From contig NC_043015.1 of NCBI RefSeq assembly GCF_006345805.1, forward strand, positions 25,482,001-25,546,000: DNA of 64,000 bases, read 5' to 3'. The position numbers were made by a program, and so were the translations under genes. The stretch's first letter is position 1. Each line of letters starts with the position of its first letter. Source of the DNA: Octopus sinensis (Eukaryota). The notes under the pieces are model-generated. The model was not told the origin of the DNA. It was given only the letters and a program-made list of their open reading frames with translations, and searched no databases. Shown here piece by piece: positions 1,240 to 56,601 of this stretch.

Positions 1240-1556
1240 GTAAAAAGCACCATCCGAATCGTGGCCGAAGCCAGTGCCGCCTCGACTGGCTTCCGTGCAG
1301 GTGGCACGTAAAATGCACCAATCCGACTGTGGCCAATGCCAGCCTCGCCTGGCACCAGTGCAGGTGGCACGTAAAAAGCACCCACTACACTCACGGAGTG
1401 GTTGGCGTTAGGAAGGGCATCCAGCTGTAGAAACATTGCCAGATAAGACCTGAGCCTGGTGCAGCCTTCTGGCTTCCCAGATCCCCGGTCGAACTGTCCA
1501 ACCCATGCTAGCATGGAGAACGGACGTTAAACGATGATGATGATGATGATGATGAT
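1240..1556 (+). mobile_element. Family A interspersed repeat (ggcacgtaaaaagcacccactacactcacggagtggttggcgttaggaagggcatccagctgtagaaac...(GAT)n)
   Basis: Near-identical to 35290-35657 and 49400-49650; two internal ~65-bp subrepeats. Confidence 0.85.
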
Positions 1557-1647
1557 TATTCTCCTTTGTTTTGTTTTTGTTTTTGTTTTTCAGGATAATA
1601 TTGAAAAAAGCAAAACCTGTTGAAGGAAAATATTTGTTCTATATATC

Positions 1648-1880
1648 AGCATCATCATCATCATTTAAAGTCTGCTTTCCATGCTGGCATGGATTGGATG
1701 GTCTGACGTGCAGCTGGCTTGCAAGAAGCTGCCCAAACTCCAATTGTCGCATGGTTTCTATTGCTGGATGCTCTTGGTAATGCCAACAGAGTGTGCCAGG
1801 TGCTCTTTACGTGCCACTGGCATGGGTGAGTTTGTGCAGCACAGGTGCAGGTCCATTTTATGAGGCACTGGCACCTGTGT
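1648..1880 (-). mobile_element. Family A copy, diverged, inverted relative to 1240-1556
   Basis: Begins catcatcatcatttaaagtctgctttccatgctggcatgg, the reverse complement of the family-A tail. Confidence 0.7.
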
Positions 1881-12155: not shown

Positions 12156-12312
12156 AAAGTTATGAGGAAATAACGTCCATGAGAGAAAAAGTTATGAGGA
12201 AATAAAGTCCACGAGAGAAAATTTATGGGGAAATAATGTCCATGAGGGAAAAGTTACAAACAAATAATGTCTGTGAGGGGAAAGTTATGGGGAAATAATG
12301 TCCGTGAGAGAT
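12156..12312. repeat. Degenerate 31-32 bp minisatellite, 5 copies (aagttatgaggaaataatgtccatgagagaaa)
   Basis: Seen: unit anchors at 12159, 12191, 12222, 12253, 12284. Confidence 0.85.
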
Positions 12313-23167: not shown

Positions 23168-24246
23168 TGGGGAAAGGAGGGAGAAAGTGTGAGATTGACA
23201 AAAAGACAAGAAGGAAAACAAATAGAGAGAGAAAGAAGGACAGAAAGAGAGGAAAATGGAGAAAGAACAAAATAAAAAGTGGAAGAAGAGAACTGCAAGA
23301 GAATGGAGAGACAATAAGAATAGCAAGGCTTTGTGCCAAGACAATAGGTAGAAATAATTATATAGAGTTGAGTTCTGATTACTGAACATAAATGAGACCA
23401 AAGGGAAAGAACAAGATAAACAACAACAAGAAGAACAACAACAACAACAGTATTGGATAATAAGTAAATGAGATGAAAGAATCACAAGCTGAATGGCATC
23501 CAAAGTTATAAGCTTTGAAATCTTGTGTGTTAATATTTCTTTCTTAATAATGTCCATTAACCATTACACAATATGGAAAAAATAAAAAAAGAATATTATA
23601 CAGTACATTGGAAAAGAAGTCAAAACACAAAATGATTTATATGAGGCAGAAAACAAAACAAAAAGATGAGAACCAACAATTGATTATACAATATGGTTAA
23701 TGAGGGACTTATTTAAAAACAATTTAGCGAATAAAGTTTGTTTTCCTGTATACATTATTTGATTTGATTTTTATTTTCTTGATCTGTCTTGTTTTGTTCA
23801 AGGTACAAGGCAGAAGAAAAACTACATCTACAGGACATCATCACTGTGGTTGTGAATACATATATCCCAGAATGCATCCAAAAAATGCTTCACTGAAGTG
23901 ACAAATGGTAAAACCACATTCGCCAACACATTGTAAATACTAAGGCAGATCTAGTTTCCTATCACTGCTTATTCCAGCCATTAACAGAGGCTCAATATTT
24001 CTCACATTGCAATACCCTAACATACCCTGCTTATCAACACCACCCTGTCTCAAATAATCCACCCTTTTCACAGCAAATCAGCTTCAACAAATTCCATTTG
24101 ATTTATGCAAGAATGAAAAAGTGTCTGTTAAAACAAAAATGATTCAAAGAGGAAAACTATGATACGAAGACAATGAATAAGATAACAACAATGATGATTA
24201 TAGTGGTGCTTATGACGATGATCCTCTAAAATCAACTTTTATCAAG

Positions 24247-27200
24247 GTAGGGGCCACTGACTGTATTTCATTTTCCTTCCACAGGTGGTGGCTACTGATT
24301 GCATTTCATTTTCCTTCTGCAGGTGGAGGCCACTGACTGTGATTCAATTTCCTTCCACAGGTGGGTGCAACTGATTGTATTTCATTTTCCTTCCACCTGT
24401 ATTTCATTTTCCTTCCACTGGTGGGGGCCATTCACTGTATTTCATTTTCCTTCAACAGGTGGGGCCACTGATTGTATTTCATTTTCCTTCCACAGGTGGC
24501 GCCACTGATTGTATTTCATCTTACTTTCACAGGTGAGGGCCACTGACTGCATTTCATTTTCCTTCCACAGGTGGTGGCTACTGATTGCATTTCATTTTCC
24601 TTCTGCAGGTGGAGGCCACTGACTATGATTCAATTTCCTTCCACAGGTGGGTGCAACTGATTGTATTTCATTTTCCTTCCACCTGTATTTCATTTTCCTT
24701 CCACTGGTGGGGGCCATTCACTGTATTTCATTTTCCTTCAACAGGTGGGGGCCACTGATTGTATTTCATTTTCCTTCCACAGGTGGCGCCACTGATTGTA
24801 TTTCATCTTACTTTCACAGGTGAGGGCCACTGACTGCATTTCATTTTCCTTCCACAGGTGGTGGCTACTGATTGTATTTCATTTTCCTTTCACAGGTGGG
24901 GGCCACTGACTGTATTTCCTTTTCCTTCCACAGGTGGGGTCCACAGGCTGCAATTCAATTTCTTTCCACAGGTGGGGGCCACTGACTGTATTTCATTTTC
25001 CTTCCACAGGTGGGGGCCACTGACTGTAATTCAATTTCCTTCCACAAGTGGGGGCCACTGATTGTATTTCCTTTTCCTTCCACAGGTGGGGGCCTCTGAC
25101 TCTATTTCATTTTCCTTCTGCAGGTAGGGGCCACTGACTGTATTTCATTTTCCTTCTACAGGTGGGGCCCACTGATTGTATTTCATTTTCCTTCCACTGG
25201 TGGGGGCCATTCACTGTATTTCATTTTCCTTCCACAGGTGGGGCCACTGACTCTATTTCATTTTCCTTCCACAGGTGTTGGCTACTGATTGTATTTCATT
25301 TTCCTTCCACTAGTGGGGGCCATTCACTGTATTTCATTCTCCTTCCACAGGTGGGGTCACCGACTGTATTTCAATTTGCTTCAACAGGTGGGGGCCATTC
25401 ACCGTATTTCATTTTCCTTCCACTGGTGGGGGCCACTGACTGTATTTCCTTTTCCTTCCACAGGTGGTGGCTACTGATTGTATTTCATTTTCCTTTCACA
25501 TGTGGCGGCCACTGACTCGATTTCATTTTCCTTTCACAGGTGGGGCCACTGACAGTATTCCATTTTCCTTCCACAGGTGGGGGTCACTGACTGTATGTCA
25601 TTTTCCTTCCACAGGTGGGGGCCACTGATTGTATTTCCTTTTCCTTTCACAGGTGGGGGCCACTGACTCTATTTCCTTTTCCTTCCACAGGTGGGGACCT
25701 CTGACTCTATTTCATTTTCCTCCAGCAGGTAGGGGCCACTGACTGTATTTCATTTTCCTTCTACAGGTGGGGCCCACTGATTGTATTTCATTTTCCTTCC
25801 ACTGGTGGGGGCCATTCACTGTATTTCATTTTCCTTTCACAGGTGGGGCCACTGATTGTATTTCATCTTACTTTCACAGGTGAGGGCCACTGACTGCATT
25901 TCATTTTCCATCCACAGGTGGTGGCTACTGATTGTATTTCATTTACATTTCACAGGTGGGGCCCACTGACTGTATTTCCTTTTCCTTCCACAGGTGGGGT
26001 CCACAGGCTGCAATTCAATTTCTTTCTACAGGTGGGGGCCACTGACTGTATTTCATTTTCCTTCCACAGGTGGGGGCCACTGACTGTAATTCAATTTCCT
26101 TCCACAAGTGGGGGCCACTGATTGTATTTCCTTTTCCTTCCACAGGTGGGGGCCTCTGACTCTATTTCATTTTCCTTCTGCAGGTAGGGGCCACTGACTG
26201 TATTTCATTTTCCTTCTACAGGTGGGGCCCACTGATTGTATTTCATTTTCCTTCCACTGGTGGGGGCCATTCACTGTATTTCATTTTCCTTCCACAGGTG
26301 GGGGCCACTGACTCTATTTCATTTTCCTTCCACAGGTGTTGGCTACTGATTGTTTTCATTTTCCTTCCACTGGTGGGGGCCATTCACTGTATTTCATTTT
26401 CCTTCCACAGGTGGTGGCTACTGATTGTATTTCATTTTCCTTCCACTGGTGGGGGCCATTCACTGTATTTCATTCTCCCTCCACAGGTGGGGTCACCGAC
26501 TGTATTTCAATTTGCTTCAACAGGTGGGGGCCATTCACTGTATTTCATTTTCCTTCCACTGGTGGGGGCCACTGACTGTATTTCCTTTTCCTTCCACAGG
26601 TGGTGGCTACTGATTGTATTTCATTTTCCTTTCACATGTGGCGGCCACTGACTCGATTTCATTTTCCTTTCACAGGTGGGGCCACTGACAGTATTCCATT
26701 TTCCTTCCACAGATGGGGGTCACTGACTGTATTTCATTTTCCTTCTACAGGTGGGGGTCACTGACTGTATGTCATTTTCCTTCCACAGGTGGGGGCCACT
26801 GATTGTATTTCCTTTTCCTTTCACAGGTGGGGGCCACTGACTCTATTTCCTTTTCCTTCCACAGGTGGGGGCCTCTGACTCTATTTCATTTTCCTCCAGC
26901 AGGTGGGGCCCACTGATTGTATTTCATTTTCCTTCCACTGGTGGGGGCCATTCACTGTATTTCATTTTCCTTCCACAGGTGGGGCCACCGACTGTATTTC
27001 AATTTGCTTCAACAGGTGGGGGCCATTCACTGTATTTCATTTTCCTTCCACTGGTGGGGGCCATTCACTGTATTTCATTTTCCTTCAACAGGTGGGGCCA
27101 CTGACTGTATTTCCTTTTCCTTCCGCAGGTGGTGGCTACTGATTGTATTTCATTTTCCTTTCACATGTGGCGGCCACTGACTCGATTTCATTTTCCTTTC

Positions 27201-30200
27201 ACAGGTGGGAGCCACTGACAGTATTCCATTTTCCTTCCACAGGTGGTGGCCACTGACTGTATTTCAATTTCCTTCCATAGGTGGGGGCCACTGACAGTAT
27301 TTCATTTTACTTCCACATGTGGGAGCCACTGACTGTATTTCATTTTCCTTCCACAGGTGGGGGCAAACTGACTGTAATTCAATTTCCTTCCACAGGTGGG
27401 GGCCACTGATTGGATTTCCTTTTCCTTTCACAGGTGGTGGCCACTGACTCTATTTCCTTTTCCTTCCACAGGTGGGGGCCTCTGACTCTATTTTATTTTC
27501 CTCCAGCAGGTAGGGGCCACTGACTGTATTTCATTTTCTTTCTACAGGTGGGGCCCACTGATTGTATTTCATTTTCCTTCCACAGGTGGGGCCACTGATT
27601 GTATTTCATCTTACTTTCACAGGTGAGGGCCACTGACTGCATTTCATTTTCCTTCCACAGGTGGGGTCCACAGGCTGCAATTCAATTTCTTTCCACAGGT
27701 GGGGGCCACTGACTGTATTTCATTTTCCTTCCACAGGTGGGGGCCACTGACTGTAATTCAATTTCCTTCCACAAGTGGGGGCCACTGATTGTATTTCCTT
27801 TTCCTTCCACAGGTGGGGGCCTCTGACTCTATTTCATTTTCCTTCTGCAGGTAGGGGCCACTGACTGTATTTCATTTTCCTTCTACAGGTGGGGCCCACT
27901 GATTGTATTTCATTTTCCTTCCACTGGTGGGGGCCATTCACTGTATTTCATTTTCCTTCCACAGGTGGGGCCACTGACTCTATTTCATTTTCCTTCCACA
28001 GGTGTTGGCTACTGATTGTATTTCATTTTCCTTCCACTGGTGGGGGCCATTCACTGTATTTCATTTTCCTTCCACAGGTGGTGGCTACTGATTGTATTTC
28101 ATTTTCCTTCCACTGGTGGGGGCCATTCACTGTATTTCATTCTCCTTCCACAGGTGGGGTCACCGACTGTATTTCAATTTGCTTCAACAGGTGGGGGCCA
28201 TTCACTGTATTTCATTTTCCTTCCACTGGTGGGGGCCACTGACTGTATTTCTTTTCCTTCCACAGGTGGTGGCTACTGATTGTATTTCATTTTCCTTTCA
28301 CATGTGGCGGCCACTGACTCGATTTCATTTTCCTTTCACAGGTGGGGCCACTGATAGTATTCCATTTTCCTTCCACAGGTGGGGGTCACTGACTGTATTT
28401 CATTTTCCTTCTACAGGTGGGGGTCACTGACTGTATGTCATTTTCCTTCCACAGGTGGGGGCCACTGATTGTATTTCCTTTTCCTTTCACAGGTGGGGGC
28501 ACTGACTGTAATTCAATTTCCTTCCACAAGTGGGGGCCACTGATTGTATTTCCTTTTCCTTCCACAGGTGGGGGCCTCTGACTCTATTTCATTTTCCTTC
28601 AGCAGGTAGGGGCCACTGACTGTATTTCATTTTCCTTCTACAGGTGGGGCCCACTGATTGTATTTCATTTTCCTTCCACTGGTGGGGGCCATTCACTGTA
28701 TTTCATTTTCCTTCCACAGGTGGGGCCACTGACTCTATTTCATTTTCCTTCCACAGGTGTTGGCTACTGATTGTATTTCATTTTCCTTCCACTGGTGGGG
28801 GCCATTCACTGTATTTCATTTTCCTTCCACAGGTGGTGGCTACTGATTGTATTTCATTTTCCTTCCACTGGTGGGGGCCATTCACTGTATTTCATTCTCC
28901 TTCCACAGGTGGGGTCACCGACTGTATTTCAATTTGCTTCAACAGGTGGGGGCCATTCACTGTATTTCATTTTCCTTCCACTGGTGGGGGCCACTGACTG
29001 TATTTCCTTTTCCTTCCACAGGTGGTGGCTACTGATTGTATTTCATTTTCCTTTCACATGTGGCGGCCACTGACTCGATTTCATTTTCCTTTCACAGGTG
29101 GGGCCACTGATAGTATTCCATTTTCCTTCCACAGGTGGGGGTCACTGACTGTATTTCATTTTCCTTCTACAGGTGGGGGTCACTGACTGTATGTCATTTT
29201 CCTTCCACAGGTGGGGGCCACTGATTGTATTTCCTTTTCCTTTCACAGGTGGGGGCCACTGACTCTATTTCCTTTTCCTTCCACAGGTGGGGGCCTCTGA
29301 CTCTATTTCATTTTCCTCCAGCAGGTAGGGGCCACTGACTGTATTTCATTTTCCTTCTACAGGTGGGGCCCACTGATTGTATTTCATTTTCCTTCCACTG
29401 GTGGGGGCCATTCACTGTATTTCATTTTCCTTCCACAGGTGGGGCCACTGACTGTATTTCATTTTCCTTCCACTGGTGGGGGCCATTCACTGTATTTCAT
29501 TTTCCTTCCACAGGTGGGGCCACCGACTGTATTTCAATTTGCTTCAACAGGTGGGGGCCATTCACTGTATTTCATTTTCCTTCCACTGGTGGGGGCCATT
29601 CACTGTATTTCATTTTCCTTCAACAGGTGGGGCCACTGACTGTATTTCCTTTTCCTTCCACAGGTGGTGGCTACTGATTGTATTTCATTTTCCTTTCACA
29701 TGTGGCAGCCACTGACTCGATTTCATTTTCCTTTCACAGGTGGGAGCCACTGACAGTATTCCATTTTCCTTCCACAGGTGGTGGCCACTGACTGTATTTC
29801 AATTTCCTTCCATAGGTGGGGGCCACTGACAGTATTTCATTTTACTTCCACATGTGGGAGCCACTGATTGTATTTCATTTTCCTTCCACAGGTGGGGGCA
29901 AACTGACTGTAATTCAATTTCCTTCCACAGGTGGGGGCCACTGATTGTATTTCCTTTTCCTTTCACAGGTGGTGGCCACTGACTCTATTTCCTTTTCCTT
30001 CCAGAGCTGAGGGCCACTGACTCTATTTCATTTTCTTTCCGCAGGTGGGGGCCACTAACTGTAATTCATTTTCCTTCCACAGGTGGGGGCCACCGACTGT
30101 AATTCAATTTCCTTCCACATGTGGGGGCCACTGACAGTATTTCATTTTCCTTCCACAAGTAGGAGCCACTGACTGTATTTCCTTTTCCTTCCACAGATGG

Positions 30201-30225
30201 GGGCCATTGACTGTATTTCATTTTC
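24247..30225. repeat. ~6 kb tandem satellite, 37-38 bp unit (consensus GTGGGGGCCACTGACTGTATTTCATTTTCCTTCCACAG), roughly 155-160 units, with higher-order repeats
   Basis: Seen directly, e.g. ccacagg at 24966 and 25004 (period 38). Copy number is estimated from length/38, not counted. There are no unique spacers. Confidence 0.97.
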
Positions 30226-31599: not shown

Positions 31600-32720
31600 A
31601 TCATATTTATTTCTTTAATCCACATAAGTTTCTAGAAAGCTGAAAAGCTATGATGGACAATGAAGATGTGTCTAATGTCCCTTATATATAAAGAGAAAAT
31701 AATTAAAAAAGAAAAGGAGGAAAATGACCAAAAAAAAAACTAGCTAAATGATTCTGTTGAAATATCTTTTTGTAGTCACCACAAATCTAGAAGTCTCAGA
31801 GAGTTGTCCTGAAAATAATAGAAACACATTGGTCATTGGAAGTGCATATTTCTAGACTAATTCTTCCTTCAGAGCAAGGTCATATTCAAACATTTTTAGA
31901 TTTCTTCCTCCTAAAGGCTTCTCTCAGTTAATGGAGAGTTTCAGTGTACAGCTTGATGTTCAACATACAGCCACTTATCAAAAAAATCAAAGAGAATTAC
32001 ACTCTTAATCTCACAAATAGTGCCCATATCTTTCTGTGCAGTCATTGACTTTTGAACATCTCAGACTTTAGAGAGGAGGTGCATCACCATTCCATTGACA
32101 AAGTCTTCATTTCTAGATCACAAAGATATCTTCATGGTTCACCCTCTGTCATCAGTTCAGGGTAAATACATCTTGATCAGCTTCAAAAGCTTCTCGTAGA
32201 AAACAAGATTTACACCCTTCTCTCTTTCAAATCTGCTGTCAACCGATGCGGTACCAACATTGCACACACTTGCCTGTACTCAAGCTTTTTCATCATCTCC
32301 AATAATCCATTGTGACCAGAGTCCAGTTGTAACTCATTTGTGTGAGTCAATTTGTCCACTCACCAGCAATTTGTGCCGGTGTTATAACATTTCATGACCT
32401 TCCACTGTGTGGTTTATCTTCAATGCTGTGTCCCATTCTTTAAACATTCTTTTATCCATCTGTGCACATTATGGTTGTCACTGTGGCCATCTCTGTAAGC
32501 AACCTTTAGCTTTCTGTGGCTCTCAAACAGCGAGCATCCTTCTCTTATCAATAACTCAATGAAGGCATGCTGCTTCTGGTTAGAAACCATCATTATCTTA
32601 CAATAAAGAAAAACAAGAAGGATCACTTTAACCACATGTGCAGTGTGAACGACCTGTGTCTGTTAAGAAAAGTTGTGGACACTTTTGCTTCACATTTGGT
32701 TCAACATTTGTAGTTATGGT
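31600..32720 (-). mobile_element. Decayed mariner transposase remnant
   Basis: Minus-strand translation gives an N-terminal HTH-like segment (QHAFIELLIREGCS...HRWIK), LEYRQVCAMLVPHRLT (GYRKVCARWVPRLLT-like), an EPWIYLCDLEMKTLSMEW-like segment (DETWIYHYDPETKRQSMEW) and a terminal ETYVD*. Many disablements. Confidence 0.75.
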
Positions 32721-32859
32721 TTTTAGACACTTGACTGAGTTTCACTTCAAATGTTGGTAACTTTTTGAAAGCCAATTTTCAAATATTGTCTTTTCTACAG
32801 TGATTTCTTGTTTTGTTTTTAGATAGAAGAAATAAAGTTTCCAACTTCCTAGATAGTCT

Positions 32860-33035
32860 CTACAAGAACATAAAGGTGATTCCATATGACCAGATAATAA
32901 GAGAATATCATTTAAGGAAATATAGCCTTTGGCACAACATTCACAGCCAATAGAATCTTTATTAACATTGTTCAGCATCTGAGGTTTGACATGTTGAATT
33001 TGGTCGCAAAAATGGAGGATTAAAGTTTCATACAT
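32860..33035 (-). mobile_element. Possible Tc1/mariner C-terminal fragment
   Basis: QIQHVKPQMLNNVNKDSIGCECCAKGYISLNDIL loosely resembles IAAIPPEMLENVMRNF...NNGGHLEDII termini; short and degraded. Confidence 0.35.
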
Positions 33036-33039
33036 TCTC

Positions 33040-33450
33040 TGTTGATTCCTGTGTCATGTAGAAATATCAGACACATCTGAATGTTGCATTACAAACTGTT
33101 TACAGTTCACTCTACAAAGCCCTTCCCCCTGTTTCCACAACAGCCTGAAGACAGCTCCAGAACCTGGTGCATGTATTCCTTATAATGTCTATGGAAAGAT
33201 CTTTGAACATCTCTTTGATCTTGGTGTTGCAGGTAGAGGGGTTTGTGTATTTCTCAGCTCCACCCCACACATAGTAATCCATGGGATTATAACCAAGGGG
33301 ATTAGGAGGCCAGAGATAGGTGGTGGGTGAAGTCATAGAAATTCTAACAACAGCATTTGACTCTTTCTGGAGGTATGGCAAGGAGCTGAAGCCTGTTGTC
33401 CCAACCATGGCCCTCTAGCAGAAACCCTCTCCATTTAGGTTTACACCACA
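33040..33450 (-). mobile_element. maT/DD37D-type Tc1/mariner transposase C-terminal remnant
   Basis: Translation GQQASAPCHTSRKSQ...LWPPNPLGYNPMDYYVWG...CNTK...RFWSCLQAVVETGG matches the QQDSAPCH...WPPNSPDCNPMDYYVWG pattern; same family as 58748-59050. Confidence 0.8.
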
Positions 33451-34925: not shown

Positions 34926-35657
34926 GGTGTGCAAGAGAGAAGTTTGCGCTGGTATGGTCGTGGGACGAGGTGGTGAAGCACGACCTTCGAACTTTAGGTC
35001 TCACCAAGGAAATGACCAGAGACTGAGACCTATGGAAGTATGCTGTGCGTGAGAAGACCCAGCAAGACTAGTGAGACCATAACCCGTGGCCTCTACCTGG
35101 TATGTAGCCAGTCGACTTATACATACCTTTCCTTCTTGGGACACAAAACTCCACTTGTGAAGACCCGTTGAGGCAAGTGAAAATCAAAATCAAAATCAAA
35201 TCAGATATCAGAAAGCAGAACCAAAATCGAAGTCTATCAACATCAATGGAAATTGCAGCTGTGATACCAGTGCTGGTGACAAGTAAGCGAACCATCCGAT
35301 CAAGGCCGTTGCCAGCGCCGCCCTGACTGGCCTCTGTGCCGGAGGCATGTAAAAAGCACCATCCATTCATGGCCGTTGCCAGCCTCGCCTGGCCCCCGTG
35401 CGGGTGGCATGTAAAAAGCACTATCCGTCCGTGGCCGCTTGCCAGCTCTGTCTGGCACCTGTGTGGGTGGCACGTAAAAAGCATCCACTACACTCACGGA
35501 GTGGTTGGCTTTAGGAAGGGCATCCAGCCATAGAAACACTGCCAGATCAGACTGGGCCTGATGCAGCCTTCTGGCTTCACAGACCCCAGTTGAACCGTCC
35601 AACCCATGCTAGCATGGAAAGCGGACGCTAAATGATGATGATGATGATGATGATGAT
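34926..35657 (+). mobile_element. Short RTE LINE 3' fragment ([11 protein letters not shown] / [21 protein letters not shown]) continuing into the family-A 3' region with three subrepeats and a (GAT)n tail
   Basis: Clear similarity to 10850-11090 and to the family-A copy at 1240-1556. Confidence 0.8.
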
Positions 35658-42130: not shown

Positions 42131-44119
42131 AATATTTAAAAATTGAAAAAAAGAAAAAGCCTCGATAGCATTTGTAAATTTGTGAGAGGGAAGATAATTG
42201 TAGTGTGTGGTTGGGGGTGTTTGAAGAGAAATAACGTTTAATCAATATATTCAACTAAGCATGTTTGAAATTATCAAAACTTTGCATACAAAAGAAATAC
42301 TTGGGAAAAAGTTTAAAATGAAGGAAAAGAAAAGAAAATTTCTCTAGAAAAGATTTTGTATTTAATAGATAATTAACTTGAAATATCCAAGGTAGAAAGC
42401 TGAGCAATTGAATAAGTGAGAGAAAGAATGTGTGTGTGTGTGTGTGTGTGGTCTCTCATCATGCTAGAAATAGCAATTGAAACCCATGCAATCCAATTAC
42501 AAAGAAGAGAGTGAGAATCTCTGTATGGTCTCCCTTCTTGCTAGATATAGCAACCAAATCTCTTTTCCCCACAAAGTATTTCCTACTGCTGTAAAAAAAC
42601 AGAAGGTATATTGGTTAATGTGAACATAAATAATGTTAGCAACAAACATAGAAGGAAGAAGGATCATGGAGTTTGATTAGGAGTCAAACTAGACCAAAGA
42701 AAGTTTGCTCCAGAGTTAGACAGTGACAAGAGAATTGGTCAGGTGTTGCTGTATTTGTTTTGGCTGCTTGTGTTCTGAGTTCAAATCCTGCTGTGGCCAT
42801 CCCTGTGTGATAGGCTTAATCTATTGCTCAGCATAATACTACATTGTTGGTACCCAGGATACTTTTAGTGGAGCAAGAAATCAGGACAGGTCTTTGGCTT
42901 AAAGATACCTTACTCCATCCCACACTCACTTACCTGTGTCTGAGGCCCTAGAAAGGGTTAGGGGCACAGCCCTTCTCTCATGAGTAAGTGATAAAAAATA
43001 TCTGATCAACAATGATATGGTATATATGACTCCACCACCACCACCACATCACCTACACCACTATCATTTTAACAAATACTTCTCTATGCTTGCATCATCC
43101 AAATGGAATTTGTTTAGGCAAATTTTCTTTGCTCTGAAGCCCTTCCTGTCACCACCCCTCACCGCTCTGATCACCTGTCTGGTCACCTGTCTGATCAAGG
43201 TAATAATCCCACATGGCCAGACATGTATGACAGTGATGTTACTTTTACAACCATTACATGTGGGCAAAACAAAGACACATACATGTATAAAGGGCTTCTC
43301 TCAGTTTCTATCTACAATATCAACTCACAAGGCATTGGTTGGCCAAGGCTATAACAAAAATACTTGCCCATGGTGCCACACAGAGGGACTGAACCTGAAA
43401 CCACTTGGCTGGAAAGCAAACTTGTTTACCATATAGCACTACACCTCAAACATTTTTACCTCCTGCAAGTAATACCTGCAACAAGTAAAAATGTATTTCA
43501 AAACTACATTATCTAATTTCTTTTTTATATGCATTTAAGCTATGATTTTGAGGGAGAATTAGCTACAATTTCTTACCATTTGAATGGTTGCTGAGAGGAT
43601 CCATTGATGGTTTGTAAAGCCTGTGACTTTCAGGTTTGTGGAGGTTAAATAAATCAGTTTGCTCACATTTATCACTGCCATTTTACAATTCAATTTATTT
43701 CAATTTATTGCAGCTGTATGCAAATACAACACAAAGTAGAGTGCAGTGCTAGCTGCAATGACAACACTTTAGGCATATCAAATTACTGCAGCAACATGCA
43801 GTTAATACACAGTTGATACAATTGTCTTGTTGCCTGGCCATTACATTCTAGCAATGTTACTGATCACAGATTATCATTATGGTTGCTGATGTCCTTCTCC
43901 TCTTTGCCAGGGTCAATTATCTCCATTGTTCTTTAGGGATTCATAAAATATAAGGACCTGACTCAACAAAATCAACTCTCACTCTCCCACTAAAATAGCA
44001 AGCTATGTGCAAAGATGCTTCTTTTTATCATTATTATTGTTGTTGTTGTTGCTGCTGCTGCTGTTGCTATTGCTGTTGCTGTTGCTGTTGTTGTTGTTGT
44101 TGTTGTTGTTATCATTTTT

Positions 44120-50271: not shown

Positions 50272-50808
50272 ACACAATATCCAGAGCATAAACCTCTGCT
50301 TTATATACACAACATCCAGAGCATAAACCTCTGCTTTATATACACAACATCCAGAGCATAAACCTCTGCTTTATATACACAACATCCAGAGCATAAACCT
50401 CTGCTTTATATACACAACATCCAGAGCATAAACCTCTGCTTTATATACACAACATCCAGAGCATAAACCTCTAATTTATATACACAACATCCAAAGCATA
50501 AACCCCTACTTTATATACACAACATCCAGAGCATAAACCTCTGCTTTATATACACAACATCCAGAGCATAAACCTCTGCTTTATATACACAACATCCAGA
50601 GCATAAACCTCTACTTTATATACACATCCAGAGCATAAACCTCTGCTTTATATACACAACATCCAGAGCATAAACCTCTGCTTTATATACACAACATCCA
50701 GAGCATAAACCTCTGCTTTATATACACAACATCCAGAGCATAAACCTCTGCTTTATATACACAACATCCAGAGCATAAACCTCTGCTTTATATACACAAC
50801 ATCCAGAG
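50272..50808. repeat. 35-bp minisatellite (acacaacatccagagcataaacctctgctttatat), about 15 near-identical copies
   Basis: Seen: ccagag at 50281 and 50316; few substitutions; one unit has a 3-bp deletion near 50620. Confidence 0.97.
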
Positions 50809-54032: not shown

Positions 54033-54179
54033 CTCATCCATATTGATTTTTTCCCTAATTGCTTTTTTCTCTTTATCCATTCTGGCAATCTCCTGATTTA
54101 ATCTTTCCTTTTGTGCAACAGTGACCTTGATTAAATGGTTTTCTGTTTCATTCTCCTTTATTACAGCCAATATGAGATC
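54033..54179 (-). CDS. CCDC39: CCDC39-like internal coding exon (equivalent to human exon 3), 49 codons: DLILAVIKENETENHLIKVTVAQKERLNQEIARMDKEKKAIREKINMDE
   Basis: Seen: acceptor ttccttattcttcttcatcag|GAT, donor GAG|gtagga, 147 nt open, phase 0/0, joins in frame to the 56337-56456 exon across a 2157-bp GT-AG intron. Recalled: human aa 71-119 [49 protein letters not shown] has the same length and ends at the c.357 boundary. Confidence 0.85.
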
Positions 54180-54294
54180 CTGATGAAGAAGAATAAGGAA
54201 GATTAAAACAAATGACAAAAATAATTCTACAACAGGCACAAGGCTTGAAATATGTGCATGTGTGGGGACAAGGAGGAGGAGGAAGAGGAGGATA

Positions 54295-56336: not shown

Positions 56337-56456
56337 CTGAGTGTTCTGGAGTTCTTGTTCCACATTCTTCTTATGTTGGGACATAGAATACATTCTTTCT
56401 TGAAGTTCATCAAATTCCTTTTTCTTACTCTTCACCTCCTGCTTTATCTGAAATAC
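56337..56456 (-). CDS. CCDC39: CCDC39-like internal coding exon (equivalent to human exon 2), 40 codons: VFQIKQEVKSKKKEFDELQERMYSMSQHKKNVEQELQNTQ
   Basis: Seen: acceptor ttttttctcatttcag|GTA, donor CAG|gttagc, 120 nt open, phase 0/0. Recalled: human CCDC39 aa 31-70 [40 protein letters not shown] aligns without gaps (E-R..SM..H.KNV.QEL..TQ). Confidence 0.88.
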
Positions 56457-56601
56457 CTGAAATGAGAAAAAATGGTAGAATGTTAAGAAACAAGAAACAA
56501 GTCCTCCTGTAGTATTTAACACTATGGTTTTGTTTTAATGGTTGTTTATACGCACAAAGTTAACCTTGGCAGAAGTTCGTCTTACTGTGCTCTAGTAGTC
56601 C

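What the first reader, a model, noticed from the sequence alone, without database searches (positions are those of the whole stretch)
24247..30225. Satellite whose every unit is a complete miniature intron / AG|GT splice module
Seen: read from GT, the plus-strand unit is GTGGGGGC-CACTGAC-TGTATTTCATTTTCCTTCCA-CAG. That is a GT start, a CTGAC branch-point match with its A 24 nt before the end, a pyrimidine tract with no intervening AG, then CAG followed at once by the next GT. Some variants give better donors (CAG|GTGAGG near 24531 and 24818; CAG|GTAGGG near 25121). Established: branch point + polypyrimidine tract + YAG directly followed by GT is the layout of recursive (ratchet) splice sites, and tandem duplication of AGGT is a proposed route to intron gain. 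Inference: ~155 such modules in a row could be a recursive-splicing ladder, a U2AF/SF1/PTB decoy array on a plus-strand transcript, or an amplified intron-exon junction. The modules point antisense to CCDC39, the orientation harmless to that gene. Caveat: 38 nt is below usual metazoan intron size, and the match could be coincidental.
Basis: partly seen in the sequence, partly recalled or inferred. Interest (0 to 1): 0.75.

Follow-up and report, generated by a model that had tools for sequence, protein, structure and literature searches.

The report
Intronic 38-bp satellite with splice-like units
A 6-kb run of about 157 copies of a 38-base unit sits antisense in what is probably a CCDC39 intron; each unit does look like a strong splice acceptor joined to a donor, but nothing shows these signals are used or protected, so it is most likely an ordinary minisatellite.

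Summary
The array is real: 38-bp period, window 24245-30225, about 157 units, all on the + strand, and found nowhere else in the window.

With approximate splice-site weight matrices, the unit junction ranks in the top 0.1-0.2% of all AG and GT sites in the window. It scores above the two real CCDC39 exons. Random 38-mers rarely match it (0.02-0.17% at the 99th percentile). The CCDC39 sense strand of the array has no strong sites.

"Every unit" overstates it. There are 117 AG|GT junctions and only 60 complete single-unit modules. AG and CTGAC are no better conserved than other positions. AG is lost in 23% of units, mostly through one variant spread by block duplication. Only GT and the branch A are near-invariant, which partly fits an A/T-favouring mutation bias.

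A 38-nt unit is shorter than validated short introns. No plus-strand gene, RNA family, homologue or second locus was found, and RNA data were not available.

Verdict: a recently expanded, neutrally evolving minisatellite with splice-like units, tolerated in antisense orientation. Plus-strand splicing is not excluded.

The parts
24245..30225 (+). 38-bp tandem array of about 157 units. The + strand consensus is GTGGGGGCCACTGACTGTATTTCATTTTCCTTCCACAG. It holds 117 AG|GT junctions. GC is 47% against about 33% in the flanks, and the + strand is T-rich.
   Evidence: TRF; register alignment; all 107 near-consensus 33-mers lie here on the + strand; composition
26354..26904 (+). Example of an internal multi-unit block duplication. 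This 551-bp block recurs at 28776-29326 with 99.5% identity. Other pairs are 26918-27468 / 29453-30003, 27745-28251 / 28500-29006 and 24760-25243 / 25820-26303.
   Evidence: Lag scan of the array
24934..24971 (+). Rearranged unit (GTGGGGTCCACAGGCTGCAATTCAATTTCTTTCCACAG) that my alignment splits into two truncated rows (13 nt + 25 nt). It recurs at 25994 and 27661 and marks copied blocks.
   Evidence: Register alignment
56337..56447 (-). CCDC39 coding exon, aligning to about residues 34-70 of human CCDC39. Its donor is CAG|GTTAGC. It has two in-frame acceptors 9 nt apart.
   Evidence: phmmer against PDB chains: 8j07_h1 E=3.1e-06, FAP59 E=5.6e-06; tblastn; sequence
54048..54182 (-). Next CCDC39 coding exon, aligning to about residues 71-115. 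Acceptor ...cttcatcag|GA, donor GAG|GTAGGA.

Best explanation
This is a non-coding minisatellite or small satellite lying antisense inside, or at least downstream within, the CCDC39 transcription unit.

A seed of about 38 bp was amplified head to tail. The seed either came from a splice-acceptor-like stretch (branch-like CTGAC, pyrimidine tract, CAG|G) or resembled one by chance. The array then grew by unequal exchange or replication slippage that copied blocks of 7-15 units.

Because the unit ends in CAG and begins with GT, tandem repetition creates an AG|GT junction every 38 nt on the + strand. The host gene is transcribed from the other strand, so its pre-mRNA carries the purine-rich complement, which has no strong splice sites. 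The array is therefore invisible to CCDC39 splicing and is tolerated.

The splice-like signals are not maintained by selection and decay like the rest of the unit.

Shown: the anatomy, strand, site strength, lack of constraint on AG and CTGAC, and the block duplications. Inferred: the intronic position, the growth mechanism, the origin of the seed and the neutrality.
For: - The array and its consensus are established.
- Irregular internal duplications of 283-551 bp at 98.5-99.8% identity occur at lags of 20-95 units, with no regular higher-order period. This is typical of recent unequal exchange.
- AG is lost in 35 of 151 units.
- In 19 of the 23 alignment rows that carry the A37T change, it is linked to the TTCAC variant of the next unit. 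This points to one dimer variant that spread by copying.
- AG (P = 0.81; base-matched 0.76) and CTGAC (P = 0.95; base-matched 0.93) are not conserved above the array average.
- A/T positions are more conserved than G/C positions (0.949 vs 0.887, P = 0.009), and C>T changes dominate. This accounts for invariant T2, A14 and T32.
- The minus (CCDC39 sense) strand of the array has no GT or AG at or above the window's 99th percentile. The + strand has 114 such GT and 110 such AG.
- CCDC39 exons are on the minus strand upstream of the array.
- There is no Rfam family and no homologue of the array ORFs.
- Folding is no better than shuffles.
- There are no copies elsewhere in the window.
- A known precedent exists: the human F7 intron 7 minisatellite of 37 bp repeats a donor site that normally stays silent (PMC1557585).
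Against: - The junction is far better than random. Scores as high as observed occur in only 3e-6 to 3e-5 of random 38-mers. None of nine other minisatellite units in the window comes close. Pure chance is therefore a weak account of the unit's origin.
- GT is almost invariant (149 of 151 units; base-matched P = 0.017) and the branch A is invariant.
- Within-array conservation is a low-power test under concerted evolution.
- No RNA data were examined, so plus-strand use cannot be excluded.
- Exons downstream of the array were not found, so the intronic position is inferred from the gene's orientation and the roughly 820 residues still to be encoded.
Confidence: 0.7

Rival explanations
1. A plus-strand (antisense or independent non-coding) transcript crosses the array and is spliced at the unit junctions. 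Single units are too short, so introns would span two or more units (76, 114 ... nt). Each splice to a unit's AG would regenerate a donor from the following GT, giving stepwise (recursive) removal of the array.
For: - On the + strand, 114 donors and 110 acceptors score at or above the window's 99th percentile. The consensus scores above the real CCDC39 sites.
- The layout equals the YAGGT plus polyY definition of recursive sites (PMC10156609).
- GT and the branch A are nearly invariant.
- A two-unit intron would place the branch A 52 nt from the donor, which is feasible (inference).
Against: - There is no evidence of any plus-strand gene, exon or RNA family.
- AG and CTGAC are not conserved.
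- Known recursive sites are single, conserved sites in the sense strand of long introns, not arrays.
- With a 6-kb target, one ordinary splice would suffice.
Confidence: 0.1
2. The unit is a copy of a genuine 3' splice-site region (intron end plus the first bases of an exon) that was amplified. This would parallel the F7 intron 7 minisatellite, which spans an exon-intron boundary. The GT after AG is incidental. This rival concerns origin only and is compatible with present neutrality.
For: - Branch motif, pyrimidine tract and CAG|G together are too good for random sequence.
- They resemble the real acceptors of this gene, such as tttttctcatttcag|GT and cttcttcatcag|GA.
- A real exon here also starts with GT after cag.
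- Precedents: PMC1557585, and tandem duplication of AGGT-containing segments creating introns (PMC3265369 and PMC4974935).
Against: - No plus-strand exon adjoins either edge of the array.
- The flanks show no unit-like sequence.
- No source junction was found in the window.
- The rest of the genome could not be searched.
Confidence: 0.12
3. The array acts through protein binding rather than splicing. One form is a plus-strand RNA decoy for pyrimidine-tract proteins (U2AF, PTB). Another is a DNA cluster of 107 CAGGTG E-boxes for bHLH, Snail or ZEB factors acting as a regulatory element.
For: - There are 107 CAGGTG motifs in 6 kb.
- A conserved T/C-rich core spans unit positions 19-32.
- The pyrimidine tract is somewhat better conserved than average (P = 0.04).
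Against: - The E-box as a whole is not conserved: A37 86%, G38 90%, G3 80%.
- Conservation of the T-rich core fits the A/T-favouring mutation bias.
- No transcription or binding data were available.
- High motif counts are automatic in any tandem array.
Confidence: 0.06
4. The array's length or internal structure is an assembly artefact, either a collapsed or an inflated repeat.
For: Near-identical blocks of 0.3-0.55 kb are hard to assemble from short reads.
Against: - There are 70 distinct unit types.
- Block boundaries are irregular and both flanks are clean and unique. This looks like real long-read sequence.
- The unit itself would still exist.
Confidence: 0.02

Closest known systems
Human F7 intron 7 37-bp VNTR minisatellite (repeated 5' pseudo-splice sites; PMC1557585)
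   Same: A minisatellite of almost the same unit length whose every unit carries a consensus splice signal. The repeated sites are functional in principle but normally silent.
   Different: F7 units repeat only a donor. They lie in the sense strand, and the first unit spans a real exon-intron boundary. Here each unit carries acceptor, branch and donor signals, the array is antisense to the host gene, there are about 157 units rather than a handful, and no adjoining exon was found.
Recursive (ratchet) splice sites of long introns in Drosophila and vertebrates (YAG|GT with polyY tract; PMC10156609 and references there)
   Same: The sequence layout is identical: a pyrimidine tract, then CAG, followed at once by GT.
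   Different: Known sites are single and evolutionarily conserved. They lie in the sense strand of very long introns and are supported by saw-tooth coverage, junction reads or lariat reads. Here there are 117 tandem copies, antisense, with an unconserved AG and no RNA evidence.
Intron gain by tandem duplication of an AGGT-containing segment (PMC3265369, PMC4974935)
   Same: Tandem duplication is what puts a GT...AG pair in register.
   Different: Those cases are one duplication inside a coding exon, giving an intron of workable length that is spliced. Here there is no coding exon, the period is 38 nt, and no splicing has been shown.
Ordinary intronic minisatellites and small satellites evolving by unequal exchange
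   Same: Head-to-tail units of 10-100 bp, many variant types, recent multi-unit block duplications, sharp boundaries and no coding capacity.
   Different: The unit's unusually good match to splice signals on one strand only.

Membership tests
Minisatellite / satellite DNA | Head-to-tail repetition of a 10-100 bp unit in many copies | tested here: met
   Period 38, about 157 copies, 79-84% matches; in-register alignment
Minisatellite / satellite DNA | Variant units shared in blocks, the signature of unequal exchange or slippage | tested here: met
   Blocks of 283-551 bp at 98.5-99.8% identity at irregular lags; linked dimer variant
Minisatellite / satellite DNA | Family present at several loci or in related genomes (satellite in the strict sense) | not testable with these tools
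   No eukaryotic genome collection was available. Metagenome scans gave 0 hits and 3 chance hits. No copies outside the array in the window.
Recursive (ratchet) splice site | Pyrimidine tract plus YAG directly followed by GT | tested here: met
   117 AG|GT junctions. Consensus acceptor 13.5 bits and donor 11.3 bits, at the 99.9th and 99.8th percentile of the window.
Recursive (ratchet) splice site | Lies in the sense strand of a long intron of an expressed gene | tested here: not met
   The only gene identified, CCDC39, is on the minus strand and the sites are on the plus strand. No plus-strand gene was found.
Recursive (ratchet) splice site | RNA evidence: saw-tooth coverage, junction reads or lariats | not testable with these tools
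   No RNA-seq access
Recursive (ratchet) splice site | Site bases under purifying selection | tested here: inconclusive
   AG P = 0.81 and CTGAC P = 0.95 (not conserved), but GT P = 0.02 and A14 invariant. The test has low power under concerted evolution and with an A/T-favouring bias.
Spliceosomal intron (one unit = one intron) | GT...branch...Y-tract...AG in order with no internal AG | tested here: met
   True of the consensus and of 60 units bounded by AG|GT on both sides
Spliceosomal intron (one unit = one intron) | Length compatible with the metazoan spliceosome | tested here: not met
   The unit is 38 nt with the branch A 14 nt from the donor. The shortest validated human introns are 43, 49 and 56 nt (PMC4463651). 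The species-specific minimum is unknown.
Splice-site minisatellite of the F7 intron 7 type | First unit spans a genuine exon-intron boundary of the host gene | tested here: not met
   The array edges abut non-coding, unique sequence and the array is on the strand opposite the host gene
Intron gain by tandem duplication | Duplication lies within a coding exon and the new GT-AG interval is spliced out | tested here: not met
   Array ORFs have no homologue. No exon was found at the site. Splicing is untested.

The most novel reading that the evidence does not exclude
An antisense or independent plus-strand RNA runs through the array and the spliceosome works along it in multi-unit steps. Each splice would regenerate a donor at the next CAG|GT. 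That would make this a natural ladder of about 117 zero-length recursive sites, with the array acting as a timing device, a sink for splicing factors, or a generator of many small lariats.
Probability: 0.05. Interest if true: 0.75.

Novelty: new member of a known kind. Interest (0 to 1): 0.28.

Why it matters
If neutral, as I judge most likely, it is a curiosity. It shows that tandem repetition of a short acceptor-like seed produces a dense array of consensus AG|GT junctions without any selection. It also shows that such arrays can persist in genes when they point antisense.

That point is a useful caution for scans that score splice motifs in repeats. It suggests a testable genome-wide prediction: splice-site-rich repeats should be depleted in sense orientation within introns.

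If the plus strand were transcribed and spliced, the array would be a natural substrate for studying donor and acceptor choice among more than 100 near-identical sites, and for studying recursive splicing outside flies and vertebrates.

Tried and rejected
1. Mapping further CCDC39 exons to prove the array is flanked by exons.
- Long concatenations of minus-strand ORF pieces searched against PDB found nothing. They did not even recover the two known exons, so those negatives are uninformative.
- tblastn with the pieces of human and another mammal's CCDC39 printed recovered only the two exons.
- Single exons are too short for the Pfam CCDC39 model PF24161.
- A regex for a W...W motif recalled from memory found nothing.
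- The protein database holds no close relative of this species' CCDC39 and only fragments of mammalian ones.

2. Other loci.
- Two metagenome scans gave 0 hits and 3 single chance 20-mer hits with unrelated flanks.
- A protein search with a 117-aa array ORF found nothing.
- Prokaryotic and viral collections were not scanned because they are irrelevant.

3. RNA family or structure. Rfam gathering search gave 0 hits in the whole window. Folding of three units on either strand is no better than shuffles, with z-scores of 0.36 and 0.95.

4. Transposon origin.
- The flanks have no terminal inverted or direct repeats.
- Only one 65-bp, 77% match to another place in the window was found.
- Pfam found nothing in 10 nearby ORFs.

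5. Regular higher-order repeat. TRF's alternative period of 189 is not supported by the lag analysis. The duplications are irregular blocks.

6. CTCF-site reading of CCACAGGTGGGGGCC. By eye it is one base out of register with the consensus as I remember it and lacks the GGC core spacing. I did not score it because no matrix was available.

7. Coding. The + strand ORFs of up to 117 aa arise only where the TTCAC variant removes the unit's TGA. They have no homologues.
Full report
**What is there**

Tandem Repeats Finder reports a 38-bp array from 24245 to 30225. It appears as three adjoining rows of 4.0, 7.6 and 146.4 copies with 79-84% matches.

This gave 151 near-full units of 70 distinct types. 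The rest are partial rows: two 14-nt-deleted units and, recurring three times, a rearranged unit that the alignment splits into two truncated rows.

A search for the 33-mer core with up to 3 mismatches gave 107 matches. All lie inside the array and all are on the + strand. A relaxed search found no solo copies elsewhere in the window.

The array has 47% G+C against about 33% in the flanks. Its + strand is strongly T-rich, with AT skew about -0.4. It has almost no CpG: 23 observed against 328 expected.

**Context**

Two minus-strand ORF pieces, at 56447-56337 and 54182-54048, align to residues 34-115 of CCDC39 from solved axoneme structures. The matches are 8j07_h1 at E = 3.1e-06 and Chlamydomonas FAP59 at E = 5.6e-06. 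tblastn confirmed both. Both have ordinary splice sites.

CCDC39 therefore runs on the minus strand, and the array lies 24 kb downstream of these N-terminal exons. About 820 residues remain to be encoded further down, so the array is very probably inside a long intron. I could not find a downstream exon to prove this. The negatives are uninformative because single exons are too short and too diverged for the available queries.

**Is the splice resemblance real?**

Yes, at the level of the consensus. I scored every GT and AG in the window on both strands with approximate donor and acceptor weight matrices.

| Site | Score (bits) | Percentile in window |
|---|---|---|
| Consensus acceptor ATTTCATTTTCCTTCCACAG\|GT | 13.5 | 99.9th |
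| Consensus donor CAG\|GTGGGG | 11.3 | 99.8th |
| Real CCDC39 acceptors | 11.1 and 12.6 | 99.6th and 99.8th |
| Real CCDC39 donors | 8.0 and 8.4 | 98.5th and 98.9th |

- On the + strand the array holds 114 GT and 110 AG at or above the 99th percentile. On the minus strand it holds none.
- None of nine other minisatellite units in the window has such a junction.
- Among random circular 38-mers, 0.02-0.17% have an AG|GT junction with both scores above the 99th percentile. Only 3e-6 to 3e-5 reach the observed scores.
- A rule-based version requires AG|GT, at least 75% pyrimidines, CTRAY 15-32 nt upstream and no intervening AG. It gives 0.05-0.11% of random 38-mers, or 1.3-1.7% with loose rules.

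The unit is therefore not a typical random sequence. These are post-hoc probabilities from one window of a genome-wide scan. A large repeat-rich genome with thousands of tandem-repeat families would be expected to contain a few such units.

**How complete is the "every unit" claim?**

It overstates the case.

- There are 117 AG|GT junctions.
- The unit ends in AG in 116 of 151 units. The others end in TG (20), AT (9), AA (5) or TA (1).
- The branch motif is CTGAC in 74 units, CTGAT in 44, TTCAC in 25, CCGAC in 7 and CTAAC in 1.
- Only 60 units are complete modules bounded by AG|GT on both sides.

**Is there constraint on the signals?**

- Mean conservation per position is 91.8%.
- A37 and G38 stand at 86% and 90%. 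The probability that a random pair of positions does as well is 0.81, or 0.76 when matched for base.
- CTGAC as a whole gives P = 0.95, or 0.93 base-matched.
- GT is nearly invariant, at 149 and 151 of 151 units (P = 0.02).
- A14 is invariant.
- Taken together, G1, T2, A14, A37 and G38 give a base-matched P of 0.10.
- A/T positions are generally better conserved than G/C positions (0.949 vs 0.887, Mann-Whitney P = 0.009), and C>T is the commonest change. This accounts for invariant T2, A14 and the unrelated T32.
- The commonest AG-destroying change, A37T, is followed by the TTCAC variant of the next unit in 19 of the 23 alignment rows that carry it. It is essentially one dimer variant that spread.

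I conclude there is no detectable selection for the acceptor or the branch motif, and a weak, uncorrected signal for GT. The test has limited power because variants spread by copying rather than independently.

**How the array grew**

There is no regular higher-order period. Identity by unit lag is flat at 0.85-0.89. Instead there are irregular block duplications of 283-551 bp at 98.5-99.8% identity, at lags of 20 to 95 units. Examples are 26354-26904 = 28776-29326 and 27745-28251 = 28500-29006. This is the pattern of recent unequal exchange or slippage.

The edges are sharp. The flanks are unique, share no repeats with each other and do not resemble the unit.

**Can a unit be an intron?**

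Geometry argues against it. A unit is 38 nt with the branch A only 14 nt from the donor. The shortest human introns validated experimentally are 43, 49 and 56 nt, and even these raise steric problems (PMC4463651).

Introns of two or more units (76 nt and up) would be feasible. A splice into any unit's AG would regenerate a donor from the next GT. That is the formal property of a recursive site, defined as YAGGT plus a polyY tract (PMC10156609). This would need a plus-strand transcript, and I found no evidence for one:

- no Rfam family in the window;
- no homologue of the array ORFs;
- no Pfam hit in neighbouring ORFs;
- no fold beyond shuffles.

**Comparison with what is known**

The nearest precedent is the 37-bp minisatellite of human F7 intron 7. 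Its units each repeat the authentic donor site, and these pseudo-sites are functional in constructs but normally silent (PMC1557585).

Tandem duplication of AGGT-containing segments is a demonstrated route to new introns (PMC3265369 and PMC4974935). Those cases are single duplications inside coding exons.

The present array has the recursive-site sequence. It fails the location criterion because it is antisense to the only identified gene, and it cannot be tested for RNA evidence here. I therefore file it as a new member of a known kind: a minisatellite whose unit carries splice consensus. It is unusual in carrying acceptor, branch and donor together and in its size.

**Verdict**

The best explanation (confidence about 0.7) is a neutrally evolving, recently expanded intronic minisatellite. 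Its seed was, or resembled, a 3' splice-site region. It is tolerated because the host gene reads the other strand, where no strong sites exist.

Plus-strand splicing remains possible, at about 0.05-0.1, and would be interesting. It needs stranded RNA data from the source species. From a SINE-like element recalled from memory, I suspect the species is a cephalopod. I did not verify this.

Noticed in passing
window 50272-50808: A second, well-preserved minisatellite: 35-bp unit ACACAACATCCAGAGCATAAACCTCTGCTTTATAT, 15.4 copies, 96% matches. It lies between the array and the CCDC39 exons. It has no splice-like junction.
   Followed up: partly
window 1240-1806 and 35068-35600 (also near 63.4 kb): A dispersed SINE-like element with an internal 62-63-bp tandem duplication. 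Its translations carry the string PCQHGKQTLNDDDD. From memory it resembles an octopus or other cephalopod SINE. The source organism was not verified.
   Followed up: no
whole window: Extreme microsatellite load. TRF gives 95 rows in 64 kb, mostly TA, AAT, GATA and CA runs of up to about 400 bp, in a genome of 36% G+C.
   Followed up: no
window 32213-33408, minus strand: Several ORF fragments that look by eye like a decayed Tc1/mariner-type transposase. Pfam found nothing at E <= 0.01.
   Followed up: partly
window 56448-56458, minus strand: The real CCDC39 exon has two in-frame candidate acceptors 9 nt apart (tttcag|GTATTTCAG|ATAAAG). The first is itself an AG|GT junction, which shows that such junctions occur at ordinary exons.
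   Followed up: no
window 24069-24133 and 43067-43131: A 65-bp stretch just left of the array matches the opposite strand at 43.1 kb with 77% identity. It may be a small dispersed repeat, and no link to the array is evident.
   Followed up: no
window 12156-12311: A 31-bp tandem repeat of 5 copies at 80% matches.
   Followed up: no
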